DNA from: Sminthopsis crassicaudata
Taxonomy: Eukaryota
Assembly (NCBI RefSeq): GCF_048593235.1
Contig: NC_133618.1
Span: 35,808,478-35,872,477 of the forward strand
Reading direction: 5' to 3'
Length of the DNA: 64,000 nucleotides
The notes under the pieces are model-generated. The model was not told the origin of the DNA and ran no database searches. It was given only the letters and a program-made list of their open reading frames with translations. Position numbers and translations under genes: made by a program. Positions 1 through 55,389 of this stretch are shown in pieces. Within the stretch, counting starts at the first letter, position 1. Each line of letters starts with the position of its first letter.

Positions 1-230
1 AGGGTGGTAGAGAGATGGGGGCAGGAGAGGTAGATTTGTGAATTCTTAGCAAAGCAAGGGAAATTAAATCCATGGGAGCTGATGATGTCACCAAGGGAAG
101 TGATATAAAGGAAAAGAGAATAGGGCCTGAGATAGAGCACCAAAGGACACCTAGAATTAGAGGGAATGATCTGAGTAAAGATCCAGCAAAGATGAGGGAG
201 AAATCCTGACCATAAAATGACCAAGGCAAT
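1..230 (-). mobile_element. L2-like LINE fragment (old), paralogous to ~29030-29420 and ~49560-49940
   Basis: Purine-rich text (gtagatttgtgaatt...gatgtcacc...gatatag) resembles the antisense L2 3' region; the same block recurs in duplicated cassettes. Boundaries approximate. Confidence 0.45.
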
Positions 231-517
231 CATTGTCTCCGAGGACCAATGATGAAGTAAGTGTGCTACTCAGTCCCTGGCAGAGAAGTGATGGACATGG
301 AGGACCAGACATATTTCAAGGCCTCCATTTTCTGTGGATTCATTTCGGTGGATTCTTGGTTAGAAAAGAAATCAAGGGCAGAACTCTCACAGCCCCAGCA
401 TCTTCCTCTGAGACCTAGAAACTTCCCCTGAGGCAGCCCAAACAAGCTGCCCCCATCCCAGCTGAGGGGAAGGAGGTGCCCCTGGGGCACTGATGCCCTC
501 TAAGCAGCTGCTGGGCA

Positions 518-545
518 GGTTTTTGTTCCGGGCTGTAGCACCGTG
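518..545 (-). other. 12-RSS of V1: heptamer CACGGTG, 12-bp spacer, nonamer ACAAAAACC
   Basis: Read directly: heptamer 545-539, spacer 538-527, nonamer 526-518. Confidence 0.95.
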
Positions 546-1124
546 GGAGGAGAGCTATAATACTGCTGACAGTAATAGACTGCAGCGTCCTCAGCCTCCA
601 CTTTGCTGATTGTGAGGGAGTAATCTGTCCCAGAACCACTGCCACTGAACCGGGCAGGGACTCCAGTGTGCAGGTTATTTGTATAATAAATTAGGAGCTT
701 GGGAGACTCCCCTGGTTTCTGCTGATACCAGTTCAGGTAATAGCTAATACCCTGACTGGCCTTGCAGGAGATGGTGACTCTCTCTCCTGGAGATGCAGCC
801 AGGGAGGCTGGAGTCTGAGTCAGCACAATGGCCCCTCGGGCATCTGGAATCACAAACACAAGAGAAATAGTGAGAACAACATCAGGCCATATTGCCAGCA
901 GGAGAAATCCTCTGACTGTGGTGAATTAAACCTTCAGGGCTGGGTTCTGCCCCCAGGATCCCAGTGCAGAGATATATTTTCTCTCTAACCCTCAGAATTC
1001 CACACTTTCCACTCCTGGTGAGGGGGGGGGGCAACAAAAGACAGGTTTGTCTCTGCTCTTCTCACTCACCTGGGATCCAGAATAACAGGACAAGGAACAT
1101 CTGAGCCTGGAACCCCATCTCCAT
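546..1124 (-). CDS. IGKV: Ig kappa V segment V1 (family I), open frame; leader exon 1124-1070, V exon 843-546
   Basis: Spliced product [123 protein letters not shown] donor, CAG acceptor, both Cys and the core Trp intact, 12-RSS. Confidence 0.95.
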
Positions 1125-1168
1125 GTGCCTGAGCTCTGAGCTGCCCAGCACCTTCCTCCCCAGCTGCC

Positions 1169-1224
1169 TTTTTATATCTGCTCTCAGCAGGGAGCTTCCT
1201 GTGCTGGGAGGGAGCCATGCAAAA
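1169..1224 (-). promoter_or_regulatory. V1 promoter: TATAAAAA (1176-1169) and octamer variant TTTTGCAT (1224-1217)
   Basis: Octamer ~93 bp upstream of the ATG, as expected for Ig V promoters; same spacing in all family I genes. Confidence 0.8.
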
Positions 1225-2086
1225 CAGCCCAGGGAGGGAGGCTTCTGCTCACAGGCAGGCCCTGTGATCTCCCCTCCTGGCTAGTCCAGAATCCTGAGCT
1301 GTCTCAGTGCAGCAGTCCCTTCTGGGACCTTGGGATGGGGGTATCCCAGTAGGTTTAGAATCTACTCTGTCCAGTGAACCTTGATAACCTCAGAGATGCC
1401 AAGAAAGCTCAGGCTCAGATGGGGACCCTCCTGGCAGAGGTTCACATTACCCGTGATTTTTATTATACTGTTCACTAATTCAGAGTGATTGACATGACTC
1501 TTTGATCATCAGGGAGGAATTTGTAGGCATTGAGTCAGTATAATGGAACAGATTATTTTCTAGTGTTGATGTAAGAATTCTGTTGGAATGTTTTCCCCAA
1601 CTGTCCCAGCTACTGAGATCTCTGCTAAGTCCTTGGAAATGGAGAATTGTTCAGCATCTGAAACTGATATTATTTGATTAGAAGAAATTACCTTAATGAA
1701 GAAGAATTTATATCACTTTATTGCTCTAGTTGGAGAACTACAAGGCCTTTCTAAACAATCTGCCACAGAAATCTCCAATAAGTGACATCTCACCTTTGTC
1801 TGTGAGCTTCTGGGGAGAAGGGACCACCTTACCATTCCCTTGTATCTCCAGCTCTTACTATAGGTTTTGGCCATAATAAGTGCCTAATCAGTATCGATCA
1901 ATTAATTAATTTATTCATTCATTGAAATGGCAGCATAAGAAACCAAGCTTTGGATGGGCCCCCCTATACACTAAGGGAAACTCATTTTTCATTCTTTTTT
2001 GATCCATACAGATGATCTGGGATTTTAAGAGTTTTGAATTCCCATGCAAACAGAGTAGCCATGGGATCCTTTAAAAGGTACCTGAT

Positions 2087-2210
2087 GGGCACTAGGTGGT
2101 ACAGGGGCTCAAGCACCGGCCCAGCCATCAGGATGCCTGGAGTTCAGATGTGCCAGCAGCTATTTACTAATTATGTAACCCTGGACAAGTCACTTCAATC
2201 AGACTGACTC
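2087..2210 (+). mobile_element. Degenerate tRNA-derived CORE-SINE (WSINE1-like)
   Basis: gggcactaggtggtacag...gagttcagat...tgtaaccctggacaagtcactt; decayed equivalents in other cassettes (~10660, ~27460, ~48010, ~54380). Confidence 0.6.
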
Positions 2211-2705
2211 AAAAATAGCTAACTTAACAAACAACGCCCCTCTCCCTGATCACAACTTAGAATTAGATATAGAAGTGAAAGAAAACTTCTTTCCCATAGG
2301 CCATAATGTTCCCCCTCAGCCTACAGCCCCCTCCCCAGAGACTCTGCCCTTCCCTGGCCTATCACTTGTTACTGGGACAGGGTCATGGCTGTGCTCAGCA
2401 GCTGTCCCCCATTGTCCTTCCCATGACCATGTCCTATCTCTGTTCCCCCTTGCACATGGTCAATCCCTCTCACAGTCAATGAGCATTACTGTCCCATAGC
2501 CAGATCCTGATCCCTTCCTCCAGCTCTTATGTCCTCCATAGCCTTTGGGTGGTATTTTCTCTCCTGCTCCAATATAATATCTATTGCTGGGTATTTGGAA
2601 AAACAGAGAGGCTGAATTTTATAGCTGAAACATGTGCCCCCAGAAAAGAGAGTTTCCATTATTTTGAAACCTTCCCTTGTCAATCATGGCTGCTTAGTGA
2701 TGACC

Positions 2706-2930
2706 AGATAGTACAGTGGACAATGTATTGGACCTGGAACCAGGAAGATCTGAATTCAAATGCAGCCTCCAACACTTATTAGCTGTGAAAGCCTGGCCAA
2801 GTCCTCTATCTATTTCAGCTTTGTCAGCTCTAATTTGGGCATAAAAATAGCACCTAGCTCTCAGTGTGTTTGTGTAGATGAAGAGTTAATATTTTGAAAA
2901 CACTTTCCTAACTTTAAATCACTATATAAA
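2706..2930 (+). mobile_element. MIR-type CORE-SINE
   Basis: tacagtggacaatgtattggacctggaaccaggaagatctgaattcaaat...; paralogs at ~11300 and ~55050. Confidence 0.55.
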
Positions 2931-3364
2931 TTCCATTTATATGGCACATAAAGGAACAAACTCCATATAATGAATATTTTATTTATTTTTCTACTGACAA
3001 ATTCTTTTATTTTTTAATAAATCCCTTCTAAAGCCACACTGACTCTCAGGTAGATGACTGTTTTCCAAATGAAGGATCAGCCTATTATGGAGGACTCTGG
3101 CAAAAATTTTGCCAACAACTACTAAGAGAGGGATCCCCCCAATTTTAAAGAAATAGATAAATACATTTAAAAAAGAAAAGATTGGAGGAGAAGGACGTGA
3201 TAAGCACTAAATAAAGTCACAAAAAGCAGATATTGATCATTTTGTCATAGACTAAAAATTATTCATTACTGATGTAAGATGCATTCCTGCATCAAGTTTT
3301 TGGATAGTCAGAATATTGATTAGTTTAAACAAAGAGGAGAGACATTCATTTTAAAATGATTCCA

Positions 3365-9122: not shown

Positions 9123-9150
9123 GGTTTTTGTTCGGGACTCTATCATTGTG
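9123..9150 (-). other. 12-RSS of V2: heptamer CACAATG, nonamer ACAAAAACC
   Basis: Read directly; heptamer position 5 G>A. Confidence 0.9.
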
Positions 9151-9700
9151 GGAGGCCAGCTATCATACTGCAGACAATGATACACTGCAGCATCCTCAGC
9201 CTCCACTTTGCTGATTGTGGGGGAGAAATCTGTCCCAGACCTATTCCCACTGAACCGGGCAGGGACTCCAGTGTGCAGGTCGTTTGTATAATAAATTAGG
9301 AGCTTGGGAAGCTCACCTGGTTTCTGCTGATACCAATATCCTCACTGGCCCTGCAGGACATGGTGACTCTCTCTCCTGGAGATGCAGCCAGGGAGGCTGG
9401 AGTCTGGGTCAGCACAATGGCCCCTCGGACATCTGGAATCAAACACAAGAGAAATAGTAGGAACATCAGGCCATATTGCCAGCAGGAGAAATCCACTGAT
9501 TGTGAGAATTAAACCTTCAGGGCTGGGTTCTGCTCCTATAATGCCAGTACACAACCATATTTTATCCTGAACCCCAGAATCCCCCCCTTCCCAGTTCTGC
9601 CCAGAACAACAAAAGACAGGCTTGTCTCTGCTCTTCTTCATTCACCTGAGATCCAGAGGAATAGGAAAAGGAGCATCTGAGCCTGGTTCCCCATGTCCAT
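9151..9700 (-). pseudogene. IGKV: Ig kappa V pseudogene V2 (family I); leader exon 9700-9646, V exon 9432-9151
   Basis: V exon is 282 nt instead of 298: a 16-nt deletion at the CDR1/FR2 boundary (~9335) shifts the frame to a stop at 9298-9296; the downstream frame still reads ...[18 protein letters not shown]. Confidence 0.93.
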
Positions 9701-9743
9701 GTGCCTGAGCTCTGAGCTGCCCAGTCCTTCCTCCCCAGCTGCC

Positions 9744-9799
9744 TTTTTATATCTGCTCTCAGCAGGGAGCTTCCTGTGCTGGGAGTGAGCCACGCAAAA
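9744..9799 (-). promoter_or_regulatory. V2 promoter, octamer mutated (TTTTGCGT)
   Basis: TATAAAAA 9751-9744; plus-strand ACGCAAAA 9792-9799. Confidence 0.7.
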
Positions 9800-23508: not shown

Positions 23509-24734
23509 AGTGGAGAGGCATATGGCAGCAAAGAACAAATGGAAAGAAAGAAATTCATAAGAAGGGATAGAATAAAGCACATCATCCAAAATGGAGACTC
23601 ACAAATATGGGAGATGGCAACAGAATGGGACAACTGTTGGAGGATTCATATGCTCCATTGTGTCCTGATGATGGGCAGAAGCATAGAGAAGAGCCCCATT
23701 GGTTTGAGTGGAGGCTTCCCATGGAACTTAGGAATGACAGAGAAGAACTCATAGTCATACGTGGCAAAGTTCTCATCTGCAGAGCTGGAAGCCCCAGACT
23801 CCAGTGAGTGTCTGATAGACTGTGATGCTTTCCTGATGTTCTGTCTTAATAAAATCACAAATAAGCAGAATCCAATAAACTAAATATACAGCATAGCCAT
23901 GTCTGATGTGTGTCTCTGTCCACTGTATCCATCCCTTCTCTGTCAGGAGGTCGGTAACTCCCTCCTAGATCCCAAGGTGTTCTAGGCTTATCCTGACCAG
24001 AGCTCCCCTGCTTTCCCTCCTGGGTATCCTATGGGAAAATGATCTGAGGCAGGCTGATGTCCAGGCAGAAGAAGGCAGCCAGGATGCAGAAAGGGCCAAA
24101 GGAAAGTTGTCTGAAGAAAAAGACAGGGAAGCTGAGCTTGGGGGAGGACCAACATGGGAAACTTTACAAGCAAGCATCGAAAGGGATGTTACAAGGATAG
24201 GGGTGAGACTTGTTCTGTATCCAAGCTCAGAAAGGTGAAGAGAGAGTGAAGGTGCAGAGAGGCCAACTTTAGACTGAACCTAAGGACAGACTCCCTGGCA
24301 ATGAGAATTATGTAGAAAGGTAATTGATGGTATGGTACTGGAGGGAGTGATAACTGAATTTGAACTCGGGTCTTCCTGACAACATGACTATTCACCAGAG
24401 ATTCGAACTCCCTCCAGGGGAACACCCAGTCCCCCTGCACTGGAGGTCTCCAAATAAAGGCAATAAGAACACTTGGTGAGGATTTGGAAAGGGAAATCTT
24501 CTTAGGTTTGGGTTAGAGAAACCAACCTTTGCGGCATCATCTAATTATTTGTATTGTGTTACTCCATGGTTATTAGATGGGAAAGAAATCAAAGTCAGAG
24601 CTTGTCATAGTCCCAGCATCTTCCTCTAAGACCTAGAAACTTCCCCCCAGGAGCCCAGACAAGCTGCCCCCTTCCTGGCTGAGGGCCAGAAGAGGCCCCT
24701 GGGACACTGATGCCCCCTCAGCAGCTGCAGGACA

Positions 24735-24762
24735 GGTTTTTGTTCAGAGCTGTATCACTGTG
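24735..24762 (-). other. Canonical 12-RSS of V5
   Basis: CACAGTG ATACAGCTCTGA ACAAAAACC. Confidence 0.97.
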
Positions 24763-25335
24763 GGAGGCCAGCTCCTACTCTGCCCACAGTAATAGACTGC
24801 AGCGTCCTCAGTCTCCATGTTGCTGATTGTAAGGGAGAAATCTGTCCCAGAGCCACTGCCACTGAACCGGGCAGGGACTCCAGGCAGGAGGGTGGAAGCA
24901 TATCTGATGATGTATTTAGGAGCCTGGCCTGGTTTCTGTTGGTACCAGTGTATGCTGGTGCTAATATCTTCACTGGCCTTGCAGGACATGGTGACTCTCT
25001 CTCCTGGAGAGCCAGCCAGGGAGGCTGGAGACTGGGTCAGCACAATGGCCCCTCGAGCATCTGGAATCACAAACACAAGAGAAACAGTGAGAACAATGCC
25101 AGGCCATATTCACAAAAAGAGAAATGTTTCTGACAATGAATGAAAGCTTTAGGAGCTGGGTCCTGCCCCCATGATCCCAGCACACAGCCATATTTTCTCT
25201 CTAATCCCCAGAATCACACTCCTTCCCAATTTTTCCCAGAACAACAAAAGATAGCCTCGTTTCTGTTCTTCCTCACTCACCTGAGATCCAGAGGAATAGG
25301 AAAAAGAGCATCTGAGCCTGGGACCCCATGTCCAT
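24763..25335 (-). CDS. IGKV: Ig kappa V segment V5 (family I), open frame; leader exon 25335-25281, V exon 25060-24763
   Basis: [117 protein letters not shown]. Confidence 0.95.
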
Positions 25336-25379
25336 GTGCCTGAGCTCTGAGCTGCCCAGCACCTTCCTCCCCAGCTGCC

Positions 25380-25434
25380 TTTTTATAGCTGTCTCAGCAG
25401 GGAGCTTCCTGTGCTGGGAGTAAGCCATGCAAAA
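25380..25434 (-). promoter_or_regulatory. V5 promoter: TATAAAAA plus TTTTGCAT
   Basis: 25387-25380 and 25434-25427. Confidence 0.8.
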
Positions 25435-25827
25435 CAGCCCAGGGAGGGAGATTTCTGCTCAGAGGCAGGTCCAATGATCTCACTTCCTAAGTAGTCCACT
25501 ATCTTGAGCTGTTTCAGGGCAGCAGTTCCCTTCTGGGACCCTGGGATGGGGATGTCCCGGGAAGATGGTAGATCTTATTCTGTCCCCATGAGCCTGAAAT
25601 TATCAAAATTTCCAAGAAAACTCAACACCAGCATGGTACCATCCGGAAGAGATTCACATATGTAAGGATCACTTCAAAGTGGGTCACTCTGCCTTGTAGC
25701 CTGAATCACTCCACACCCCCCCCCATCACTCATAATTCTTGTGAGATTCCCCACCTTTTCACAGGAATTACTAGGTGTGACTGTCAGGAAGAACTTTGTC
25801 AGCATTCAAGTCAGTATAACAGAAGGG

Positions 25828-25972
25828 NNNNNNNNNNNNNNNNNNNNNNNNNNNNNNNNNNNNNNNNNNNNNNNNNNNNNNNNNNNNNNNNNNNNNNNNN
25901 NNNNNNNNNNNNNNNNNNNNNNNNNNNNNNNNNNNNNNNNNNNNNNNNNNNNNNNNNNNNNNNNNNNNNNNN
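25828..25972. other. Assembly gap (145 N)
   Basis: N run; the paralogous interval upstream of V7 is ~57 bp and contains a (TA)n run. Confidence 1.
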
Positions 25973-26159
25973 ACATAACTGGCAGAGCCACTGAAGGAAG
26001 TCCCTGCTACCAAAGTCCTTGGAAATGTCAGCTGCTTCAGCATTAAAATTGATCTGGTTTTATTAGAATAAAAAGCATGAATGAAGGGAAATTACCATCA
26101 CTTTTTTCTGTCCTTGGAGAGCTAAAGGATCTTTCCCTCCAACGTGCAGCTGAAATCTC

Positions 26160-27133
26160 TGTGAGGGATAAAAACCCTCACCCCAAGATGACTACTCAGA
26201 AACCTCTAGGAGCAAAAAGCAGAAAAGTTGGTGTTTATTAATAAATTCTCATGAGAATGAGCAATTCCACCAATGGAAGGGAAAGAGAGGAAGCTCGCAG
26301 TAAAACGGCTAAAGAAGTAGGAAAGATATACTCTTTTTAGAGGTTCTGTTACAAAGCGTTACATCATAAGTTGGGGAGCATTAAGAAATAGGTGCCCTCT
26401 CCTGTTAGGTTCTTACTAGGTGCTAAGTCGGTACTTAACAATTCTCTAGCTCAGGGTTCACACCTTTAGTTCACACCTTTAAAAGGAGGAAGTTCATTGG
26501 TTGTAAGTAGTTCCCACAAGCCCCTGGAGTACCCATAGGCCCATTGTCTGGGAGAATAAATGAGGAGGGCAATTGGGAAGGAAGCCGTCTGGATTGGGTC
26601 AAGGAGAAGACTTCCCACACTCTGGGAGGCAGAGTCTGATTCCCACACTCTAGGAGACTCAGAGTCAAGATTTTATTTCCACATCTTACCTTTGCTCAGG
26701 CTGGAGGCTCCAGAAGCCTCCCAAGAAATCTGCTCACAAAGAAAAGGATTTACAGAAAAGAAACCACCTCCCAGAGAAGGATTACAATTGAGAGATGACA
26801 GGATATTACACTCTCCCCTTAATTAAATGTTAGACATTGGTGAAAAAATAGGTTAGAATGAAATGCTTTCAGATTCCCTGCTTCCAAGAGGAACCAGCCA
26901 TCACACCTTCAGATTACTAAACTAGCAGCATTTAAACTAATAGTCTAAATATTGATAGCATTGAACAGTGATCATATCAGATTAAGTAAATATACCTAAA
27001 GTTTAAGTAAATATTGGCTAATACTCAACATATTTATGCAGGTCACAGAGACATAGAAATAATGGAAAAATAAAATACAGAAAAGGAATTTCAACATTTC
27101 TGGAAGTTCTTCACCTTATCTCTATTCCCCACA
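26160..27133 (-). mobile_element. Solo LTR (TG...CA, 4-bp TSD TCTC) containing a nested second LTR; paralog 47136-47702
   Basis: Host sequence gaaatctccaacatgtga (uninterrupted in the V2 cassette) is split; minus-strand AATAAA ~75 nt from the 3' end. Confidence 0.8.
26403..26810. mobile_element. Nested solo LTR, 408 bp, TGTTAGG...ATATTACA, 6-bp TSD CTCTCC
   Basis: TSD 26397-26402 and 26811-26816; removing it reconstructs the paralogous empty site ggtgccctctccccttaatt (~47367-47386) exactly. Confidence 0.9.
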
Positions 27134-29443
27134 TCTCCAACATGTGATTCCTCCCCTCCGTCCTCTGTGAGCTCCTGGGGAACGGGGACCAGCTTATTGT
27201 TGCCCTTGTGTCTCTGGTTCTTAGCACAAGGCTTGGCCCCTAACAAATGCCTGATCTGTACTTTTTTATTTATTAATTTATTCATTGATTAAATGGGCTG
27301 TATAAGAAACCAAGCTTTGGATAGGCCCCTCTACAGCAAGAGAAACTCCTTTTTCTCCTCATTGACTCCACACAGATCATCTTTGGGAATTTTGGAATGT
27401 GTATGAATTCCCATTCAAACAGAGTAGCCACAGGATCCTTGAGGAAGAATGGAAAGGCAGCTACTGGGCATCTCAGTGCATAGAACACCAGTCCTAGAGA
27501 CAGGAGGACTTGAGTCCAAATATGACATCAGACTTTTAGTAGGTGTGTGACATTGGACATGTCACTTAACTCGGATGCCCCCTTTACCTGAAAAAAGCCC
27601 CCAGGATTCCCAAGCTATAATTTGATACAGAAGTGAAGGGAAATTTCTCTTCCCTAGACCACCCATCAGTCTGCAACACCTTCCCCAGATGCAGCTAAAG
27701 GCTCTGCCCTTGTCTAGACCTCCCAGGCCTAGCCTAGCTTCTCTCCATCCCTACTCCTTCCTTCAGGGGTCACTGAGGCATGGTCATGGCTGTGCTCAGC
27801 ACCTGTCCTCCATTGCTTCCCATCATTGTGTCCTGTCTTTGTCCTCCTCTGCACATGGCCAATGCCTGTCCTCAGCTCACAGGAAATAAAAGTCATTGTG
27901 CCACAGATGGGCACTGAACTCTGACTTCATCCCTTCTGCCCTCCACAGCCTGTGGGTAGTAATTTCTCTTCTGCTCTAGAATCAGACCCATTGCACTGCT
28001 GGGTATTGGGGGAAATAGTGAGGCTACATTTACAGAAAAGACATGTGGAAGTAGCTTATATGACACCCATTGTTAAAGTATTAATGACTTGGCAACAAGT
28101 GGACTCTCTACTATAAGTGTGAGAGGATAATCAAGGTTCACAGTCAAGTTGGGATTCTATGAGATTGTAAAAAGTAAGTAAGTAAAAAGTAAGAAAGTAA
28201 TAAGAAAGCTTGGAACAGGGAGGGACAATGGAAAGGGAGAAAACAGATGTTTTCTCATCAAGGACTATGGTAGTCCAGTGAAATTACTATCTCATAATTT
28301 CATGGAAAATAAAATCAAAACAGGAATTAGCCTCTTTCTCTAAGGTCTGAAAAATCTCCTGAGGTAGCCGAGAAGATTCTGTCTCCTAACTCAGGAGAAA
28401 AGATTCAGTTTATGTCTTTCATGCAAAGTACTTAAAACTCCTCTATTCCATTAAAGTTTTGTTTTGTTCCCTTCACGATTAAATTTAAAATGGGCAGAAT
28501 AAGATATTCCTGATTTTAGTATTATTGCATTATGGAAAATTGTTTTTCCAAGATCTTCTCTAGGATTTACTAGATGCTGCTAGTCTTTTGTGATATGAAG
28601 TCATTTCTTGTGCTTTGAAATGCTTCTTTCTGGAGTTTTACCATATTATTTTCTATTTTATATATAACAGGAGTTTTAGGCATGCTGTTCCTGAAACTTT
28701 TCCCTTATCCTGCCATCTGAGGATAATCATACAGGGAATAAAATAGTTCTTTAATGAGATAGAAAACTGTCAAATTTTTTGATGAATACAATAGAAATCA
28801 AATGATTAGCATATGAAAAGTGCTTTGCAAACATTAAAATTCAATATTTCTCATTAATATTATTATTAACACTAAATTTCCATAGTTTAAGAGCCTTGGC
28901 TATGATCATAGAGGCAACACAACTAGACTGAACCCATTTCATAAACCTCAAGACCAGGCATCTATCTACCAGGAGATCCAGGACCTGAGCTCTCTTTCTA
29001 ACTATTAGCAACACCTGAAATATGGGGTGGGGAAGGCAGTGAGAAATAGGACTTCAGGATGAATCCTAGGTCAGAGCCTTAAAGATTTCAAAGGCAGTTG
29101 TTGCCCTCTACATCACTGAAACAAGAAGAAGGTTGAGGGGGGAAGATAAGTTTGGTTTTGAACATGTTGACTTTAAGATCTCCTGGATTTTCAATTAAGA
29201 TGTCTGAAAGGCAGTAGGTGATGCCAGTTTGGAGGGGGGCAGAGAGATAGGGACAGGAGAAGTAGATTTGTGAATTGTTAGCAAAGCAACATGAATTAAA
29301 TCAGTGGGAGCTGGTGATGTCACCTACTAAAGTGATATAGAAGGTGAAGAGAAGAGGGGCCAGGACAGATCCCTGAAGAGTACCAATAGTTAGAGGACAA
29401 GATCTGAGAAAGGATCAAGAAAAAAATGATGGGACTTCCGGCC

Positions 29444-35499: not shown

Positions 35500-37179
35500 T
35501 GGAAGTGGATTTCTTCAACATAGAGAAGAGCTAATCCAATTCCAATTGATTAATGATGGACAGAACCAGCTACATCCAGAAAAGGAACACTGGGAAATGA
35601 ATGTAAACTGTTATTTTTACCTTCTGAATCCAATTCTTCCTGTGCAACAAAAAAATTCGGTTCTACACACATATATTGTATCTAGAATATACTGTAATAT
35701 ATTTAACATATATAAGACTGCTTGCCATCTGGGGGAGGGGGTTGGGGGAGGAAGGGAAAAAATCTGAATAGAAGTAAGTGCAAGGGATAATGTTGTAAAA
35801 ATTACCCATGCATATGTACTGTCAAAAAAATGTTATAATTATAAAATAAAATTAAAATTTAAAAAAATGATGGAAAATCATAAACAGAATGAGCAAGATC
35901 ATCATGTTTCCAGAGGATCAATGATGAAGTGTTCCACCCCTCCTGACAGAGAAGTCATAGACATGAGGGGCAGAGACTTGTATTTCAGGGCAAAGTTACT
36001 CTGTGGATTCATTTTGTTTGATTGTTTATTTCTTACAAGGCTATTGTTTTTTTTTTCCTCATTCATTCTCTCAGTTTTAATTGATGGTGAACAGTGAGAC
36101 AGATCAGAAGCAAATAGGTTTAGCAATAGTGATGAAAAACTGGGGAAATAACATTTTAAAAAATACCCTGAAAAGAAAAGGAGGCACTTTGCAGTGGAGT
36201 AAAGAAACACAGGAGATTTAAGAAATGAAATATATGATTATCATCTACTTTTTTAAGTCAAAGTGTATGAAATGGAGAATCAGATTTTCATGCAGATTAC
36301 TTTGTTGTATGTTCTGTTGGGATGAATGGAAATGTTCTTTATGGTTAAGGTTTTAATTATTTTTTTTGAAAGCATGCCCCCCTGTACATGGTGAAAGAGC
36401 TTCCATTAATTTCAATTCTTCCTTTGTCTACCAGGTCTCACATTCAAAGAGGGTCACTCAGGTACTGGTGGAATCATGAACACTTTTAGCTTTAAATCAC
36501 ACTTCTCTTCCAAATTCTGTGTGTACTTACCCAGACATTTCCATTTAGTCCTTTCTCCCTGAAGACATGGGATTATTCTCTATGGAGAGGATATGTTTTA
36601 TGTGGAATGTTATTTTTTGCAAATAAGATGTATAAATAATTCTCTATGCCATGATATGACTACTTTATTTAATTTGAGTTAATTATATAGATAGATTTCC
36701 TTTTTAAGGCTTTTTGTTTTCAAAGTATATGCATCGATAATTTTCAGTGTTCATATTTGCAAAACTTTTGTTTTCCAATTTTTCCCTCCCTTGGCTTAGT
36801 TCCTCCCCTAAATAGCAAGTTATCTATTATAACTGCATATGTAATGTTAAAATGTTTATATTAATTCACAAACAGATCCCAGCTTATGCTACTCAGTAAG
36901 ATCCCTTTTAAAGACAAAAACCGAAATTAGAAAGAGGGAACAATATTTATAAGTAGTTTTTTTTTTTTTCAGCAAGATGTAGATGTATCCATAATTTGCA
37001 CATCATAATGACTTTATTTTGACTTAAATTTATAAATATCTTTTATTTTTACGTTGAATTACATGTATATCTCTATTTTAGTCTTCTACTCAAAGGACTA
37101 AGACAAATAATAAAAAATAACAAGGAGTGAGGAAGAGTCCAGTAAAACCCACAAGTAAATTAACATAATACAACAAGGA

Positions 37180-37950
37180 ATTCTTAAGAAGGGGAAGAAT
37201 ACAGAATCATCCAGAATATAAGCTCAAAATATGTCAGGTGGCAAAAGAATGGGGCAACTATTGGATTATCTATAGACTCCACTGTGTCCATATGATGTGC
37301 AGAAAAATAGAGAAAGGCTCCATTGGCTTAGAGCCCTTTCAGTGAATTTAGAAGGATAAAAGGGGTCTCACAGCATGGGCATGTATGGCTGAGTGGGAAT
37401 TTCCCCAGCTGGAAGGACCAGTCACTGTCTGATAAGAGTATGACAGAACAGTGTTCTATGTTAGAGAAACCACAAATAAACACAGTCCAACAAACTAAAT
37501 CCTCAGAATAGCCATGTCTGACATGTATGTGTGTCTCTGTTCTCTAAGTCTATCTCTTCTCTGTCAGGAGGTGGATAATTCTTGTTTAGGTCTCAAGTTG
37601 TTCTAGAGCTCCCCTGAAATCCTGCTTTCCCTGCTAGGTGCCCCATGGGAAAAGACCTGGGGCAGGCTGGTGATCAGGCAGAGGGAGGATGGGGAAGAGA
37701 GAAGAGGCCAAGAGACAGGAAGGTCACCTAAAGGAATTAGGGAGCTAAGCTTGGAGGAGGAGCAACATGGGGCATGAAGTACCCGCTTCCAAGGCTTCAA
37801 AGGGCTGTGACAAGGATGGAGGTGAGACTTGTTCTGTCAGATACCAAAGCCCAGAAATGAGAGCAAAGGGTGGAAGGGGTGGAGAGGCTGGGTTTAGATT
37901 TAAGCTAAGAAGAGACGCCTTGGCAATGAGAACTATGCAGAAATACAATT
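37180..37950. repeat. Cassette tail block downstream of V6
   Basis: Closest to the block at 51230-52160. Confidence 0.75.
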
Positions 37951-38509: not shown

Positions 38510-38537
38510 AGTTTTTGTTCGGGGCTGTATCACTGTG
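38510..38537 (-). other. 12-RSS of V6: CACAGTG-12-ACAAAAACT
   Basis: Last nonamer base C>T. Confidence 0.93.
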
Positions 38538-39044
38538 GGAGGCCACCTATAGTCCTGCTGACAGTAATAGACTGCAGCGTCCTCAGTCTCCACTCTGCTG
38601 ATTGTGAGGGAGTAATCTGTCCCAGAGCCACTGCCACTGAACCGGGCAGGGACTCCAGTGAGCAGCCTGTCTGTATAATAAATTAGGGGCTTGGGAGCCT
38701 CCCCTGGCTTCTGTTGGTACCAATTTAATTCTTTACTAACATCTGAGCTGGTCTTGCAGTTAATGGTGACCCTCTCTCCTGGAGACACTGACAAAAATTC
38801 TGGAGTCTGAGTCACCACAATGGCCCCCCTGGAACCTGGAATAAAAAAGAAAAGACAGAACTTGATCCATATAATTTTCAATTCATAATGATCAAGCAGA
38901 GGAAAATAGACCAAATTTCCTTCTCCCTCCTAACCTTCCCCAGACATATCCCAGAGATGGCCAGAAAGCAATGGAGCATGTGCAGGATCCCTCACCTGAG
39001 ATCCAGAGCAGCAGAGAGCAGAGGAGCTGAGCCTGGGATCCCAT
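38538..39044 (-). CDS. IGKV: Ig kappa V segment V6 (family II 5' part), open frame; leader exon 39044-38996, V exon 38835-38538
   Basis: [115 protein letters not shown]. Confidence 0.95.
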
Positions 39045-39137
39045 CTCCTCCCCTGGCCTTGAATGCTGCTGAATAGTGATCCCACCCATGATCCCACATT
39101 TATGAGTATAAGCACCTGGGGTGGTCTCTGGGGAAAC

Positions 39138-45810: not shown

Positions 45811-45838
45811 GGTTTTTGTTCAGAGCTGTATCACTGTG
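45811..45838 (-). other. Canonical 12-RSS of V7
   Basis: Identical to the V5 RSS. Confidence 0.97.
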
Positions 45839-46411: not shown

Positions 46412-46455
46412 GTGCCTGAGCTCTGAGCTGCCCAGCACCTTCCTCCCCAGCTGCC

Positions 46456-47702: not shown

Positions 47703-50700
47703 TCTCCAACATGTGATTTCTCCCCTCCGTCCTTTGTGAGTTCCTGGGGAACGAGGACCAGCTTACTGTTGCCCTTGTGTCTCTGGTTCTTAGCACAAGG
47801 CTTGGCCCATAACAAATGCCTGATCTGTACTTTTTTTATTTATTAATTTATTCATTGATTAAATGGGCTGTATAAGAAACCAAGCTTTGGATAGGCCCCT
47901 CTACAGCAAGAGAAACTCCTTTTTCTCTCATTGACTCCACACAGATCATCTTTGGGAATTTTGGGATATGAATTCCCATTCAAACAGAGTAGCCACAGGA
48001 AGGGCAGCTGCTGGGCAGCTCAGTGCATAGAGCACCAGAGCTAGAGACAAAAGGACTTGAGTCCAAATATGACATCAGATTTTTAGTAGGTGTGTGACAC
48101 TGGGCATGTCCCTTAACTCTGATGCCCCCTTTACCTGAAAAAAGCCCCCAGGATTCCCAAGGTATAATTTGATACAGAAGTGAAGGGAGATGTCTCTTCC
48201 TTAGACCATCATGTTTCCCATCAGTCTGCAAAACCTTCCCCAGAAGCACCTAGAGGCTCTCCCCTTGTCTGGACCTCCCAGGCCTAGCCTAGCTTCTCTC
48301 CATCCCTCCTCCTTCCTTCAGGGGTCACTGAGGCATGGTCAGGGCTGTGCTCGGCACCTGTCCCACATTGCTCCTCCCCATCATTGTGTCCTGTCTTTGT
48401 CCACCTCTGCACATGGCCAATGCCTGTCCTCAGCTCACAAGAAATAAAAGTCACTCTGCCATAGATGGGCACTGAACTCTGACTTCATCCCTTCTGCCCT
48501 CCACAGCCTACAGGTGGTATTTTCTCTTCTGCTCTAGAATCTGACCCATTGCACTGCTGGGTATTGTGGAAAATAGTAAGGCTACATTTACAGATAAGAC
48601 ATGTGGAGGTAGCTTATATGAGATCCACTGTTAAAGTATTAATGACTTGGCAACAAGTGGGCTCTCTACTATGAGTGTGAGAGGATAATCAAAGTTCAAG
48701 GTCAAGTTGGGATTCTGGGAGATTGTATGGACAAAAAGTAATAAGAAAGCTTGGAACAGAGAGGGGCAATGGAAGGGGAGAAAACAGATGTTTTCTCATC
48801 CAAGAGTCTGCTAGTCCAGTGAAATTACCATCGCATAACTTCATGGAAAATAAAATCAAAACAGGAATTAGCCTCTTTCTCTGAGGTCTGAAAAATCTTC
48901 TCCTGAGGCAGCCTAGAAAATCTGTATGCTCACTCTGGAGAAAAGACTCAGTTATAGTTTTCATCCAAAGGTCAGTTTTGTTCCCGACATGATTAAATTT
49001 AAGACTGGAAGAATAAGATATTCCTGATTTTAATATTATTGCATTATGGAACATTGTTTTTGCATTGTTTCTCTGGGGTTTACTAGATGCTACTAGTCTT
49101 TTGTGATATGAATCATTCCTTGTGCCTTGAAATGCTTCTTTCTGGTGTTTTACCACATTTTTTCTCTCCTATATATAACAGGAGTTTTAGGCATGCAGTT
49201 CCTGGAACTGTTTCCTTATGCTGCCATCTGAGTATAATCATACAGGGAATAAAATAGTTCTTTAATGAGGTAGAAAACTGTCAAGCATTTTGGATGAATA
49301 GAATAGAAATTAAATGATTAGCATATGAAAAGTGCTTTGCAAACATTAAAATGCAATATAATTTCTCATTAATATTATTATTAATATTAAATTTAGATAG
49401 TTTAAGAGCCTTGGTTATGATCATAGAGGCAACAGAACTAGACCTAACCCATTTCATAAGCTTCAAGACCAGTGATCTATGTACCAGGAGATCCAGGACA
49501 CTGAGATCTCTTTCAAAGTATTAGCAAGAGCTGAGATGGGGGGGGAAGACAGTGAGAAATAGGACTTCAGGATGAATCCTAGGTCAGAGCCTTAAAGATT
49601 TCAAAGGCAGTTGTTGCCCTCTACATCACTGAAACAAGAAGAAGAAGGTTGAGGGGGGAAGATAAATTTGGTTTTGAACATGTTGACTTTAAGATCTCCT
49701 GGATTTTCAATTAAGATGTCTGAAAGGCAGTAGGTGATACCAGTTTGGAGGGGGGCAGAGAGATAGGAACAGGAGAAGTAGATTTGTGAATTGTTAGCAA
49801 AGCAACATGAATTAAATTAGTGGGAGCTGGTGATGTCACCTACTAAAGTGATATAGAAGGTGAAGAGAAGAGGGGCCAGGACAGATCCCTGAAGAGTACC
49901 AATAGTTAAAGGACAGGATCTGAGAAAGGATCAAGAAAAAATGAGGGAAAATAATAAACATAATGAGCAAGATCATCATGTTTCCAGAGGATCAATGATG
50001 AAGTGTTCCACCCCTCCTGACAGAGAAGTCATAGACATGAGGGGCAGAGACTTATATTTCAAGGCACAGTTACTGTGTGGATTCATTTTGTTTGATTCTG
50101 TTTATTTCTTACAAGGCTATTGTTTTTTCCTCATTCATTCTCTTAGTTTTAATTGATGGTGAACAGAGAGGCAGATCAGAAGCAAATAGGTTTAGCAATA
50201 GTGATGAAAAACTGGGGAAATAACATTTTTCAAAATACCCTGAAAAGAAAAGGAGGCACTTTGCAGTGGAGTAAAGAAACACAGGAGACTTAGGAAATGA
50301 AATATATGGATTATCATATACTTTTTTAAAGTCAAAGTGTATGAAATGGAGAATCAGATTTTCATTCAGAATACTTTTTGTATGTTCATTTAGGCTGAAT
50401 GGAAATGTTCTTCTTTAAATATTTAAAAAAATATTTTAATTTAAATTTTAAAAATTAATTCTTTTTTAAAGCATGGACCTTTGTATATGGTTGGAGAGCT
50501 TCCATTGATTTAAATTCTTCCTTTGTCGACCAGGTCTCATATTCAAAGAATGTCACTCATGTACTGGTGGAATCATGAACACTTTATCTTTAAATCATCC
50601 TTCTCTTTCCATTTACATGTGGACTTATCCAGACATTCCCATTTAGTCCTTTCTCCCTAAGCACATGGACATTCTCTATGTAGGGGAGATGTCTTTTATG

Positions 50701-51229
50701 GAATGCTACTTTTTCTAAATAGGATCTATAAATACTTCTCTATGCCATGATATGACTACTTTAATTAATTTGATTAAATTATATAGATAGATTTCTTTTT
50801 ATTAAGGCTTTTTATTTTCAAAATTTATGCATAATTTTCAATATTCATCCTTGCAAAATTATCTAATGTTAAAATTAAACTTTTTATATTAATTCATAAA
50901 CATATCCCAACTTATTCTACTCAGTAACACTCCTTTTAAAGACAAAAACTAAATTAGAAAGAGGAAATAATATTATAGGTAGTTTTTTTCAGCAAGATGT
51001 AGATGTATCCATAATTTGCATATTATAATGACTTTATTTTGACTTAAATATATTAATATCTTTTATTTTTACCTTGAATTATAGGTATATCTCTGCTTGG
51101 TCTTGTACTCAAAGGACTATGACAAATAATAAAAAATAAAAAGGAGTGGGGAACAGTTCAGTAAAACCTACAAGTAAATTAACATAATACAGCACAAAGA
51201 GGAGAAGATCAGATTTTTCAACTCCTTTA

Positions 51230-52160
51230 CTGGGTCAAACACAGTCATTGCGGGGAGAAAGCATTGAGTTTGGTCAGGGAGGTTTTGTTTTTATTCACAT
51301 CACTGCATTCCTTCTATGTCTTGTTTAACTAGTGGTGCTTAGTGAACTCACTGGAACAGCATGTGGGAAGGAAGAACAAATAGAAACAAAGAATTCTCAA
51401 GAAGGGGGAGAATACAGAATCATCCAGAATATAATCTCAAAATATGTCAGGTGGCAAAAAAAAATGGGACAACTATTGGATGATCCATAGAATCCACTGT
51501 GTCCTGACCATGTCCCCAAACAATGGGGAAGGGCTCCCTTGGCTTTGGTAGAGCCTTCTCAGTGAACTTAGAAGGATGTTATAAAAGGGGTCTCACAGCA
51601 TGGGCGTGCATGACTGAGTGGGAATCTGCCCAGCTGCAAGTCACAGTCCTTGTCTGACACACTGTGACAGTTTGCGGTTCTATGTTAGAGAAATCACAAA
51701 TAAACAAACTGAATCCACAGAGTAGCCATGTCTGACATGGGTGTGTGTCTCTATCCTTTAAGTCCATCTCTTCTCTGTCAGGAGATGGATAACTCTTGTC
51801 TAGGTCCCAAGTTGTTCTAGATTTGTCCTGGTCAGAGCTCCCCTGAAATCCTGCTTTCCCTGCTGGGTGCCCCATGGGAAATGGCCTGAGGGAGGCTGGT
51901 GACCAGGCAGAGGGAGGATGTGGAAGGGACTAGAGGCTAAAAGACAGGAAGGTCACCTAAAGGAATTAGGGAGGCTGAGCTTGGGGGAGGAGCAACATGG
52001 GGCATGAAGTATCCACTTGCAAGCATTCAAAGGACTGTGCCAAGGATGGGGGTGGGACTTGTCTGGTACCAAAGCCCAGAAATGAGAACAAAGGGGGGAA
52101 GGTGCAGAGAAGCTGAGTTTAGACTCAATCTAAGAACAACCTCCCTGACAATGAGAACTA
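51230..52160. repeat. Cassette tail block downstream of V8
   Basis: Homologous to 37180-37950. Confidence 0.75.
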
Positions 52161-52748
52161 TGTAAAAGTACAATTGATGATCCAGTACTGGAGGCAGTAG
52201 TCATAAGAATAATGGCTAACATTGCTCAGAGGTTAGTAAGTTCCAAGCACAGTGCTAGGCACTTTACAATCATGATCTCACTTGATTCTCTCAACAACCC
52301 TAAAAGACTGAGACAGAGGTCAAGTGACTGGTCCAGAATCACACAACTGAAAAGGACTTCAGACTGCAATGGCATTCAGGTCTTCCTGACAATGTGGCTC
52401 TATCCACTGCATCAGTGAGCTCCCTTGGGAGTTAGGCCTCCCATCCTAGACATCTTCCAGAAAAAGCTACAAGAACACTATTTGAAGATCTGGAAAGAGG
52501 ACAGACGATCATATGTGGGTTAGACAAGCCCTACTTTGGGATGGGAATTAATTTTATTAATTTGATTGTGTCACCTCATGATTCTTGACTGGGAAAGCAA
52601 TCAAGGTCAGAACTCATCACAGCCATGGCATCATCCTCTGAGACCTGGAAAACTCCCCTAGAGGCAGCCCAGACAAGCTGCCTTCCTCCCAGATGAGGGG
52701 AACTAGCAACCCCCGCGGCACTGATGCCCTCTAAGCAGCTGCTGGGCA

Positions 52749-52776
52749 GGTTTTTGTTCGGGCCTGTATCACTGTG
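52749..52776 (-). other. Canonical 12-RSS of V8
   Basis: CACAGTG ATACAGGCCCGA ACAAAAACC. Confidence 0.97.
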
Positions 52777-53356
52777 GGAGGATAGCTATCCCACTGCTGA
52801 CAGTAATAGACTGCAGCGTCCTCAGACTCCACTTTGCTGATTGTGAGGGAGAAATCTGTCCCATACCCACTGCCACTGAACCGGGCAGGAACCCCTGAGT
52901 GCAGGATGTCTGCAGACCTAATGAGGAGCCGAGGGGCCTGCCCTGCTTTCTGTTGGTACCAGTTCAGGTAATAGCTAATACCCTGACTGGCCTTGCAGGA
53001 CATGGTGACTCTCTCTCCTGGAGATGCAGCCAGGGAAGCTGGAGTCTGGGTCAGCACAATGGCCCCTCGGGCATCTGGAATCACAAACACAAGAGAAATT
53101 GTGAGAACAATACCAGGCCAGATTCCCAGCAGGAGAAATCTCTCTGACTGTGGTAAATTAAACTTTCAGAGCTGGGTCTTGCCCCCATGATCCCATTGCA
53201 GAGCCACATTTTCCACCTGACCCTCAGAATCCCACACTTTCCACTCCTGGTGAGGGGGGGGGGAACAAAAGACAGGCTTGTCTCTGCTCTTCCTCACTCA
53301 CCTGGGATCCAGAATAACAGGACAAGGAACATCTGAGCCTGGAACCCCATGTCCAT
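52777..53356 (-). CDS. IGKV: Ig kappa V segment V8 (family I), open frame; leader exon 53356-53302, V exon 53074-52777
   Basis: [117 protein letters not shown]. Confidence 0.95.
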
Positions 53357-53400
53357 GTGCCTGAGCTCTGAGCTGCCCAGCACCTTCCTCCCCAGCTGCC

Positions 53401-53456
53401 TTTTTATAGCTGCTCTCAGCAGGGAGCTTCCTGTGCTGGGAGTGAGCCATGCAAAA
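53401..53456 (-). promoter_or_regulatory. V8 promoter: TATAAAAA plus TTTTGCAT
   Basis: 53408-53401 and 53456-53449. Confidence 0.8.
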
Positions 53457-55389
53457 CAGCCCAGGGAGGGAGGCTTCTGCTCAGAGGCAGGACCAGTGAT
53501 CTCCCTTCCTAGCTGGTCCAGAACTCTGAGTTGTATCAGTGCAGCATTCCCCTTCTGGGATCCTGGGATGGGGATATACCAGTTGGGTTAGACCCTACTC
53601 TTTCCTCATGAGCCCTGAAAACCTGCAAGATGCCAAGAAATCTCAGGAGCAGAGGGGGACCTGCCTAGAAGAGATTCACATATATGGTCAGTGATTTCAA
53701 GGGGATCGCCCTGCCTTGTAGCTTGTAGTGCCCCCCATAACTCATAATTCTTGTGAGATTTCACAGATGTTCACAGAAATAACTATGTGTGATTGTCAGG
53801 ACATCTCTGTAGGCATTCAAGTCAGAATAATACCAGAGAGTCGTTTCCTAGGGCTGATATATTTAATATTGAAACCCCCCCCCACTGCATAATTGGTACA
53901 GCTACTGCAGAAAGTTTCTGCTACCAAAATCCTTGGAAATGTCAAATGATTCAACATCATAAATTGATCTGCTTTGACCCAATGCATTAATGAAGAGAAA
54001 CTGCCATCACTTTTTCAGCACTTAGAAAACTCCAAGCAATTTCCCTCCAACCTGCAGCTGAAATCTCTAATAAGTGACATCTCTCCCTATTTCTCTGTGA
54101 GTCCCTGGGAGCAAAGACCCCTTTACTGTTCTCCTAATGTCTTCAGCTCTTAGAACAAGGCTTGGACCATAATAAATACCTAATCTGTATTTTTCCTTTA
54201 TTAATTTATTCATTGTTTAAATGGATTTTATAAAAATCTAAGCTTTAGATGGGCACCTCCAAACTAAAAGAAACTCCTTTTTCTTCCTCATTGACTCCAC
54301 ACAGATGATCTGGGAACTTTGGGATATGAATTCCCATTCAGTGTAGCCACAGGATCCTTTAAGAAGAATGTAAAGGCAGCTGCTGGGCAGCTCAGTTGAT
54401 AGAGTTCTAGAGTCAGGAAGATCTGAGTTCAAATATGACACCAGTTATTTACTAGCTGTGTCACCCCGTATGTTACTTAATGCTGTTGCCACCCTTACCC
54501 ACAAAAATCCTAAGATCACATGATTCTCAAGCTATAATTTGATGTAGCAGTGAAAGGAAATTTCTCTTCCACAGACCATAATGTTTCCTATCAGTCTGTC
54601 AGCCTCCTCTCCAGAGATTTATACAGGCTTTGCCCTTACCCTTGCCCCCGAGAGCTGGCCCATCCTCTCTCTATCCTGGCTCCTTCTCAAGCACCTGAGT
54701 GGTCCCTGGGGTGTGGTATTGGCTGTGCTAGACAGCTGTCCCCCACTGTTCCTCCCCATCATTGTTTTCAGTCTCTGTCCCTCCATGTATGTGGTCAATC
54801 CCTGTCCTCAGCTCACAGGAAATGAAAGTCACTATTAGATGGACACTGGCCCCAGCCTCCAGCCCTTCTTCCCTCCCCAGCCTCTGGGTGATATTTTCTC
54901 TCTTGCTGCAGGATCAGAGGTATTGCACTACTGAATATTGGGAAGAACAGAGAGGCTGCATATGCAAAGTTGACATGCTCCCAGACAAGAGGGTTTCCAT
55001 TATTTTGAGATCTTCCCTTGTCAACAAAGCCTGACTAGAAATGGTCGCATAGTGCAGTAGATAGTGTGCTAGACTTAGAATTAGAGGTTCTGAATTCAAA
55101 TCTAGCCTTTAACACTTAGTGGCTGTGAAACCCTGTGGAAGTCATTTATACTATATCTATTTCAGCTTCCTTGGTTCTAAAACCAACCAAGGAAACAGTT
55201 TTGTCACATAAAGGAGAGCAAAAGAGCCCAGTGTCTAAAAAACAAATATTTCATTTTCTTGCCAAGTAAAAATGCTAAAACTCAAGGGTAATGCCAGTTT
55301 GAAATATAACTTCATTTGCTGGATTTTGTAAAGAATTATAAGTGGAATTACCCCATTGGTGATGTTCCCATTCTATATACATATTTTGA

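What the first reader, a model, noticed from the sequence alone, without database searches (positions are those of the whole stretch)
546..1135. Germline V genes are modular patchworks: V1 and V8 share FR1-CDR1, leader and RSS flank but not FR2-CDR2
Hand counts, V1 vs V8: FR1+CDR1 differ at 3/102 nt (identical CDR1 [11 protein letters not shown]), the leader exons at 1/55, and 43 nt spanning the nonamer are identical (486-528 vs 52717-52759). Both also share an intron G10 segment found in no other V here. Yet the 63 nt of FR2-CDR2 differ at 19/63, where V1 differs from family II V6 at only 7/63, and V8 FR2 (KAGQAP.LLI) resembles pseudogene V3. Mid-intron and upstream flanks are visibly more diverged. 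Inference: short gene-conversion tracts reshuffle CDR modules between germline V genes. This would build germline diversity and could make pseudogenes useful donors. I know of no description of it for a marsupial IGK locus, but cannot search.
Basis: partly seen in the sequence, partly recalled or inferred. Interest (0 to 1): 0.7.

Follow-up and report, generated by a model that had tools for sequence, protein, structure and literature searches.

The report
Mosaic germline kappa V genes
Two antibody kappa light-chain V genes 52 kb apart are near-identical over about 1 kb, but their FR2-CDR2 stretches have a different ancestry, the footprint of sequence exchange between neighbouring V genes, a process known in mouse and human since the 1980s.

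Summary
The window carries eight minus-strand V-kappa segments. V1 and V8 differ at 1/55 nt in the leader, 3/102 in FR1+CDR1 (CDR1 identical) and 20/66 in FR2+CDR2. They share a 43-nt identical run over the nonamer and an intron G10 run that no other V here has. One count was off: V1-V6 is 8-10/63, not 7/63.

The cluster is not chance (scan statistic p=1e-5). It is not selection alone either: synonymous divergence is 0.50 in the tract against 0.075 in FR1+CDR1, and the intron differs by 9%. A triplet test (p=4e-6), PHI (p=2e-4 to 4e-4) and reciprocal AU tests (0.010 and 0.027) all indicate recombination.

V8, not V1, is probably the odd one out. The V1-V8 similarity is itself only a ~1.1-kb island, and V8's 3' flank is V6-like. 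V2, V6, V7 and the V5/V7 pair also show exchange. Breakpoints do not consistently follow FR/CDR borders.

This is germline non-allelic gene conversion or unequal crossover, a classical mechanism. It is apparently not yet described for a marsupial IGK locus. No donor role for pseudogenes is shown.

The parts
518..1124 (-). V1, apparently functional V-kappa segment. Leader exon 1070-1124; intron 844-1069 (G10 at 1022-1031); V exon 546-843 (FR1 764-832, CDR1 731-763, FR2 686-730, CDR2 665-685, FR3 569-664, CDR3 546-568); heptamer 539-545, 12-nt spacer, nonamer 518-526.
   Evidence: Open frame and translation; coordinates; Pfam V-set E=7e-19; PDB light-chain V domains.
659..725 (-). V1 FR2-CDR2 tract (alignment columns 747-813). 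20-21 differences from V8, 5 from V2, 8-10 from V4 and V6.
52749..53356 (-). V8, apparently functional V-kappa segment. Leader 53302-53356; intron 53075-53301 (G10 at 53254-53263); V exon 52777-53074 (FR1 52995-53063, CDR1 52962-52994, FR2 52917-52961, CDR2 52896-52916, FR3 52800-52895); RSS 52749-52776.
52890..52956 (-). V8 FR2-CDR2 tract, of V3/V5/V7-like ('class B') ancestry with 6-7 private changes. The best in-window match is V3 FR2, 86.7% over 45 nt.
351..1447 (-). V1 side of the ~1.1-kb V1/V8 similarity island (88% overall, 85-99% by bin). Beyond it the flanks are no closer to V8 than to other V units.
52580..53681 (-). V8 side of the ~1.1-kb V1/V8 similarity island.
49936..52580 (-). 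V8 3' flank, paralogous to the V6 3' flank (35862-38340) at 80-97% identity and not to the V1 flank.
9123..9700 (-). V2, a pseudogene with a 16-nt deletion in CDR1. Its exon is V1-like, with a FR2-CDR2 tract at 9264-9330. Its upstream region, leader and 5' intron are V5/V7-like.
   Evidence: triplet p<=2e-6.
15314..15912 (-). V3, a pseudogene with an in-frame stop in FR2. It is the loosest 'class B' relative of the V8 tract (FR2 8/45).
38510..39049 (-). V6, with a family-II (V4-like) head and a V1/V8-like FR3-RSS. Its 3' flank is V8-like.
   Evidence: p=1.2e-4.
24832..25096 (-). V5 side of a 265-nt run identical to V7 (45908-46172), inside units that are 8-11% diverged.

Best explanation
These are eight tandem, same-orientation germline V-kappa segments whose sequences have been exchanged repeatedly over evolutionary time. 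The exchange was non-allelic homologous recombination in the germ line: interlocus gene conversion and, for the larger blocks, unequal crossing-over. V1 and V8 share a ~1.1-kb island, from promoter to just past the RSS, of common and fairly recent ancestry (about 9% intron divergence). Within it, a 67-134-nt stretch covering FR2 and CDR2 has a much older coalescence (30% overall, 50% at synonymous sites). In that stretch V1 groups with V2, V4 and V6, and V8 groups with V3, V5 and V7. V2 carries the V1-type tract next to a V1-type FR1 and FR3, so V8 is most likely the gene whose FR2-CDR2 is foreign. Two routes fit. A class-B donor not present in the window may have overwritten the tract. Alternatively, the tract may be the unconverted remnant of an old class-B gene that was converted on both sides by V1-like sequence. 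Shown: mosaic ancestry and its statistical significance. Inferred: the molecular mechanism, the direction, and any benefit for repertoire diversity.
For: Per-module counts. The state at most V1/V8 differences in the tract is shared with other genes rather than private: V8 with V3/V5/V7 at about 13 sites, V1 with V2/V4/V6 at nearly all. Synonymous divergence is 7.5/15.0 in FR2+CDR2, against 2/26.7 in FR1+CDR1, 3/23 in FR3 and 21/225 in the intron; Fisher p=0.0009-0.004 and 0.0005. The scan statistic gives p=1e-5. The 3SEQ-like triplet V1 = V8 background + V6-like run at columns 757-813(851) gives p=4e-6, which survives Bonferroni correction over 336 tests. With V2 as the minor parent, p=7e-5. 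PHI gives p=4e-4 for 8 genes, 2e-4 for 6 genes and 0.007 for the exon only. Partition trees place (V1,V8) together in promoter-intron (93%) and FR1-CDR1 (81%), but split (V1,V2) from (V3,V8,V5,V7) in FR2-CDR2 (97%). AU tests reject (V1,V8) in the tract (p=0.0099) and reject (V1,V2) in columns 236-746 (p=0.027). Neither tract is identical to any paralogue in the window (best matches 94% and 87%), whereas an in-window assembly copy-paste would give about 100%.
Against: The partitions for the trees and AU tests were chosen after seeing the data, and the tract is short (67 nt). The triplet test cannot say which of the three sequences is the recombinant. With V3 as stand-in donor, the signal for V8 as the child is weak (p=0.018). 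No close donor for the V8 tract exists in the window (nearest 14/66), and 6-7 of its changes are private and concentrated in CDR2, so some accelerated CDR2 evolution probably contributes. Permutation tests assume exchangeable sites. The public short-read contigs are too fragmented to bridge the tract boundaries. Only 64 kb of a locus that probably holds many more V segments was seen.
Confidence: 0.78

Rival explanations
1. One reading: V1 (and, separately or ancestrally, V2) received a short family-II (V4/V6-like) FR2-CDR2 tract by conversion, and V8 keeps the original family-I tract.
For: The triplet V1 = V8 + V6 gives p=4e-6. V1 and V2 group with V4 and V6 in the tract tree. Three sites support the exact split V1,V2,V4,V6 against V3,V5,V7,V8.
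Against: V1 and V2 are still 8-10/66 from V4 and V6. V2 shows the same tract type on a V1-type exon. With V8 as the single misplaced gene, the exon trees need only one event. Rooting on family II makes class A look ancestral and class B derived.
Confidence: 0.2
2. No exchange took place. V1 and V8 are duplicates, and FR2-CDR2 of V8 diverged by point mutation under diversifying selection on the antigen-binding and VH-contact surface.
For: CDR2 is a hypervariable loop. 6-7 V8-private changes lie in or next to CDR2. pN in the tract is 0.245.
Against: pS in the tract is 0.50, above pN and five times the intron divergence. About 13 of the V8 states, including silent ones at columns 747, 750, 771 and 780, already exist in V3/V5/V7. 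FR2 is a framework, yet it differs at 13/45.
Confidence: 0.07
3. Assembly chimera: reads of paralogous V genes were merged, creating false mosaics.
For: V genes are a multicopy family. Logan short-read contigs break at shared FR3 and leader sequence, which shows how hard the family is to assemble.
Against: Neither tract matches any in-window paralogue above 94%. The patterns are old divergences, not copy-paste. An 81-nt contig from a different sample and study (run X2) covers 655-735, the whole V1 tract, with 2 differences. All four runs from three studies give depth over 601-800. Mosaicism is seen in five or more genes at several scales.
Confidence: 0.05

Closest known systems
Germline (meiotic) gene conversion among immunoglobulin V-gene family members. 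Human V-kappa: Bentley & Rabbitts 1983, cited in PMC2187249. Mouse T15/S107 VH family: PMC2187249, PMC2189069, PMC2189536.
   Same: Short patches of sequence, silent sites included, are shared between non-allelic V genes of one cluster, so trees conflict along the gene. The exchange is inferred to be germline.
   Different: The species and locus differ: a marsupial IGK cluster, the fat-tailed dunnart according to earlier scan notes. Here the evidence is paralogue comparison within one haplotype, not allele comparison between strains. The events are old (about 9% or more divergence), not recent.
Interlocus gene conversion in human IGK segmental duplications: the ~16-kb IGKV1-13/IGKV1D-13 exchange (PMC11327106).
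   Same: Non-allelic exchange between paralogous kappa V units that alters V alleles.
   Different: The human event is about 16 kb, lies between large inverted duplications and is polymorphic. Here the tracts are 0.07-1.1 kb, plus kb-scale flank swaps, between tandem direct repeats. Population status is unknown.
Unequal crossing-over hybrids (Lepore-type) within birth-and-death evolution of V-gene arrays (established knowledge: Ota & Nei 1994, Sitnikova & Nei 1998; recalled, not read here).
   Same: V2 (V5/V7-like 5' half plus V1-like 3' half), V6 (V4-like head plus V8-like tail and flank) and the V6-like 3' flank of V8 look like hybrid units made by misaligned recombination between tandem repeats.
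   Different: The double-sided V1/V8 FR2-CDR2 patch needs conversion or two crossovers. A single unequal crossover does not explain it.
Somatic gene conversion from V pseudogenes in chicken and rabbit B cells (for example the abstract of bioRxiv 10.64898/2026.09.05.749481).
   Same: Templated transfer of short V-gene patches, including CDRs.
   Different: That process is AID-driven and acts in B cells on a rearranged V. Here the mosaics are in unrearranged germline segments that keep their RSS. No somatic process was tested or is implied.

Membership tests
Immunoglobulin kappa V gene segment (germline, unrearranged) | Split leader, short intron and V exon encoding a V-set domain with Cys23, Trp35 and Cys88 | tested here: met
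   Translations; Pfam V-set E=7e-19, 1.5e-15 and 3e-17 for V1, V8 and V6; top PDB matches are antibody light-chain V domains. The leader exon and V exon were searched separately and only by reference.
Immunoglobulin kappa V gene segment (germline, unrearranged) | RSS with heptamer, 12-nt spacer and nonamer directly 3' of CDR3 (kappa type, not the 23-nt lambda type) | tested here: met
   V1 has CACGGTG, 12 nt, ACAAAAACC at 518-545. V8 has CACAGTG, 12 nt, ACAAAAACC at 52749-52776.
Immunoglobulin kappa V gene segment (germline, unrearranged) | Linkage to J-kappa and C-kappa | not testable with these tools
Non-allelic (interlocus) gene conversion / recombination mosaic | Phylogenetic incongruence between adjacent segments, significant against a no-recombination null | tested here: met
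   Triplet p=4e-6; PHI p=2e-4 to 4e-4; reciprocal AU p=0.0099 and 0.027.
Non-allelic (interlocus) gene conversion / recombination mosaic | The discordant tract differs at silent sites as well as replacement sites, which excludes selection alone | tested here: met
   pS is 0.50 in the tract against 0.075 and 0.13 in the flanking exon parts, with the intron at 0.093.
Non-allelic (interlocus) gene conversion / recombination mosaic | An identifiable donor with near-identity to the tract | tested here: not met
   The V1 tract is 5/66 from V2. The V8 tract is at least 14/66 from every gene in the window. The donor may lie outside the window, or the events may be old.
Non-allelic (interlocus) gene conversion / recombination mosaic | The mosaic is real in the organism (independent reads spanning the breakpoints) | tested here: inconclusive
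   Logan contigs over the V exon are 70-130 nt. One contig from another sample covers the V1 tract (655-735, 2 differences), but none bridges it by 31 nt or more on both sides.
   Breakpoint intervals: columns 703-747 and 813-837 (V8 patch), about 787-811 (V6), about 505 in mid-intron (V2), 104-204 upstream (V7), and intron end to mid-FR3 (V5/V7).

The most novel reading that the evidence does not exclude
Marsupials are reported to have limited VH diversity and to rely on light-chain germline diversity (PMC3454362, PMC13637050). Under this reading, patchwise exchange that recombines CDR1 and CDR2 variants among IGKV genes, with pseudogenes such as V2 and V3 serving as reservoirs, is frequent and selectively retained. 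It would then be a significant generator of the germline light-chain repertoire, not incidental noise of a tandem array.
Probability: 0.12. Interest if true: 0.55.

Novelty: new member of a known kind. Interest (0 to 1): 0.3.

Why it matters
Even in a marsupial kappa locus, V-gene phylogenies and 'family' assignments cannot be read from whole-gene trees. Leader/intron, FR1-CDR1, FR2-CDR2 and the flanks each tell a different history. This matters for annotating and naming dunnart IGKV genes and for germline reference sets used in repertoire sequencing. It also bears on whether exchange between paralogues creates new CDR1/CDR2 combinations. It does not reveal a new mechanism.

Tried and rejected
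1. Selection alone was rejected on synonymous sites.
2. Chance clustering was rejected by the scan statistic.
3. I looked for a further V relic in the window that could be the donor of the V8 tract. blastn-short and tblastn found only the eight known segments.
4. I tested V8 as the formal recombinant of V1 with V3 or V5. The signal was weak (p=0.018 and 0.24), so the direction rests on parsimony using V2, not on a test.
5. Read support: Logan contigs are too short across the V exon to bridge the breakpoints.
6. Literature: no paper in the searchable library describes germline V conversion in a marsupial IGK locus. The library lacks most subscription journals, so absence is weak evidence.
7. 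Earlier scan notes gave no other IGK window of this genome.
9. The N runs (25828-25972, 42977-43209, 55592-55839) were left untouched.

Full report
**What is there.** The window holds eight V segments, all on the minus strand. They were found by similarity to the first one, and tblastn confirmed that these are the only ones.

| Segment | Window coordinates | Note |
|---|---|---|
| V1 | 518-1124 | |
| V2 | 9123-9700 | |
| V3 | 15314-15912 | |
| V4 | 19973-20527 | |
| V5 | 24735-25335 | |
| V6 | 38510-39049 | |
| V7 | 45811-46411 | |
| V8 | 52749-53356 | |

- Each segment has a split leader, a 160-230-nt intron and a V exon, followed by a heptamer, a 12-nt spacer and a nonamer.
- The V exons are Pfam V-set domains, and their best solved relatives are antibody light-chain V domains. 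With a 12-nt spacer they are kappa-type segments.
- V2 has a 16-nt deletion in CDR1 and V3 has an in-frame stop in FR2. The other six read open.
- V4 and V6 have a different leader, intron and promoter ('family II'). The other six share theirs.
- Earlier scan notes name the genome as the fat-tailed dunnart. I did not verify that.
- The leader and V exons were searched separately and by reference.

| Region, V1 vs V8 | Differences |
|---|---|
| Leader | 1/55 |
| FR1 | 3/69 |
| CDR1 | 0/33 |
| FR2 | 13/45 |
| CDR2 | 7/21 |
| FR3 | 6/96 |
| Intron | 21/225 |
| Proximal upstream | 37/223 |

- The run 486-528 equals 52717-52759 exactly.
- A G10 run occurs only in the introns of V1 and V8.
- The only numerical slip is V1-V6 in the tract, which is 8-10/63 rather than 7/63.
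- The cluster of differences is far beyond chance. The maximum is 21 in 66 nt, with p=1e-5 inside the conserved core and 6e-4 over the whole 1.1 kb.

That is not what the sequence shows.

- Nei-Gojobori counts give pS=0.50 (7.5/15.0) and pN=0.245 in FR2+CDR2.
- The comparison values are pS=0.075 in FR1+CDR1, pS=0.13 in FR3 and 9.3% in the intron. Fisher p is 0.0009-0.004 against the rest of the exon and 0.0005 against the intron.
- The V8 state is shared with V3, V5 or V7 at about 13 of the roughly 20 differing tract sites, including silent ones. The V1 state is shared with V2, V4 or V6 at nearly all of them.
- These are therefore pre-existing variants, not new mutations.

**Formal recombination tests.**

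- A 3SEQ-like maximum-descent test over all 336 ordered triplets put V1 = V8 background + V6-like run (columns 757-813, perhaps to 851) at p=4e-6. This passes Bonferroni correction.
- With V2 as the minor parent on the longer six-gene alignment, p=7e-5.
- A PHI test that I implemented gives p=4e-4 (8 genes), 2e-4 (6 genes with promoter and intron) and 0.007 (exon only).
- ML trees place V1 with V8 in promoter-leader-intron (93%) and FR1-CDR1 (81%). In FR2-CDR2 they place V1 with V2 against V3+V8+V5+V7 (97%).
- AU tests reject each topology on the other partition (0.0099 and 0.027).
- Caveat: the partitions were set after looking at the data. The triplet and PHI tests do not share that weakness.

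**Which gene is the mosaic?** The triplet test cannot tell. Three observations bear on the question.

- V2 carries a V1-type FR1 (2/69) contiguous with a V1-type FR2-CDR2 (5/66). Within the exon, the only gene whose position changes between partitions is V8. One event affecting V8 is the most economical reading.
- The V1-V8 similarity is only a ~1.1-kb island (351-1447 and 52580-53681). Farther upstream, V8 is as close or closer to V2, V5 and V7 (72-87%) than to V1 (52-75%).
- Downstream, the V8 flank (49936-52580) is paralogous to the V6 flank at 80-97%, not to the V1 flank.

V1 and V8 are therefore not simple recent duplicates. The tract divergence (30%) equals the distal-flank divergence (25-34%). 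That fits the idea that FR2-CDR2 is an unconverted remnant between two converted stretches. It fits an overwrite by an unseen class-B donor equally well. The V8 tract has 6-7 private changes, mostly in CDR2, and no in-window relative closer than 14/66.

**The pattern is general but not modular.** There are four other exchange signals.

- V2 is V5/V7-like from upstream to mid-intron (columns 63-505, p<=2e-6) and V1-like after that.
- V7 has a ~100-nt V2-like patch upstream that includes a shared 3-nt deletion (p<=2e-6).
- V6 is V4-like up to CDR2, then V1/V8-like through FR3, with a V8-like 3' flank (p=1.2e-4).
- V5 and V7 are identical for 265 nt across the exon, although their units differ by 8-11%.

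Breakpoints fall upstream, in the intron, in CDR1/FR2, in CDR2 and in FR3. 'Patchwork' is justified. 'Modular' is not.

**Artefact check.**

- Contigs from four public runs (three studies, same organism label) were laid on 1-3000 at 97% or more.
- Across the V exon they are only 70-130 nt long, because the de Bruijn graph branches at shared FR3 and leader sequence.
- One 81-nt contig from another sample covers 655-735, the whole V1 tract, with two differences. All four runs have depth over 601-800.
- None bridges both boundaries by 31 nt or more, so the result is supportive but not decisive.
- The stronger argument against a chimera is that neither tract matches any in-window paralogue above 94%. 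A source outside the window cannot be excluded.

**Comparison with what is known.**

- Germline conversion among V genes was proposed for human V-kappa by Bentley & Rabbitts in 1983 (reference list of PMC2187249).
- It was shown to be meiotic in the mouse T15 VH family (PMC2189069) and was seen in outbred mice (PMC2189536).
- A 16-kb IGKV exchange is common in humans (PMC11327106).
- The marsupial papers I could search describe many V-kappa genes and families and a reliance on light-chain diversity (PMC3454362, PMC13637050). They do not mention germline conversion in IGK.

The finding is a new instance of a known process. A donor role for pseudogenes and any somatic templating remain untested speculation.

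**Verdict.**

- Novelty: new member of a known kind.
- Interest: 0.3.

Noticed in passing
window 24832-25096 and 45908-46172: V5 and V7 are identical for 265 nt, from the last ~36 nt of the intron through FR1, CDR1, FR2 and CDR2 into FR3. Their duplication units are otherwise 8-11% diverged (intron 19/220, upstream 24/214, downstream 14/164). This suggests a recent homogenising conversion, or very strong constraint.
   Followed up: partly
window ~9560-10750 (V2 upstream, leader and 5' intron) vs V5/V7 units: Pseudogene V2 looks like a Lepore-type hybrid. It is V5/V7-like (84-91%) from far upstream to mid-intron, and V1-like (91-94%) from there through the exon. Triplet p<=2e-6.
   Followed up: partly
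window ~46550-46650 (V7 upstream; alignment columns 104-204) vs V2 ~9835-9935: There is a short (~100 nt) V2-like patch in the upstream region of V7, including a shared 3-nt deletion absent from V7's close paralogue V5. Triplet p<=2e-6. This is a non-coding conversion tract.
   Followed up: partly
window 35862-38340 vs 49936-52580: The 3' flanks of V6 (family II) and V8 (family I) are paralogous at 80-97% over ~2.5 kb, although the two genes have unrelated leaders and introns. V6 switches from V4-like to V1/V8-like near CDR2/FR3.
   Followed up: partly
window 1-356 vs 49749-50099: The sequence 160-520 nt beyond the V1 RSS matches a stretch 2.6 kb beyond the V8 RSS (74%) that straddles the junction of two duplication blocks at about 49940. 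V1 may therefore lack ~2.5 kb present in the 3' flanks of the other V genes, or the match may be a dispersed repeat. The window edge prevents a decision.
   Followed up: no
window 23505-29425 vs 44569-49941: A large tandem duplication unit (~5.5-6 kb, about 88.6% identical) carries V5 and V7. It is interrupted in the V5 copy by an N run at 25828-25972, which was left untouched.
   Followed up: no
window 539-545: The V1 heptamer is CACGGTG (G at position 4), as is V3's, whereas V8 and the others have the canonical CACAGTG. The effect on the rearrangement efficiency of V1 was not assessed.
   Followed up: no
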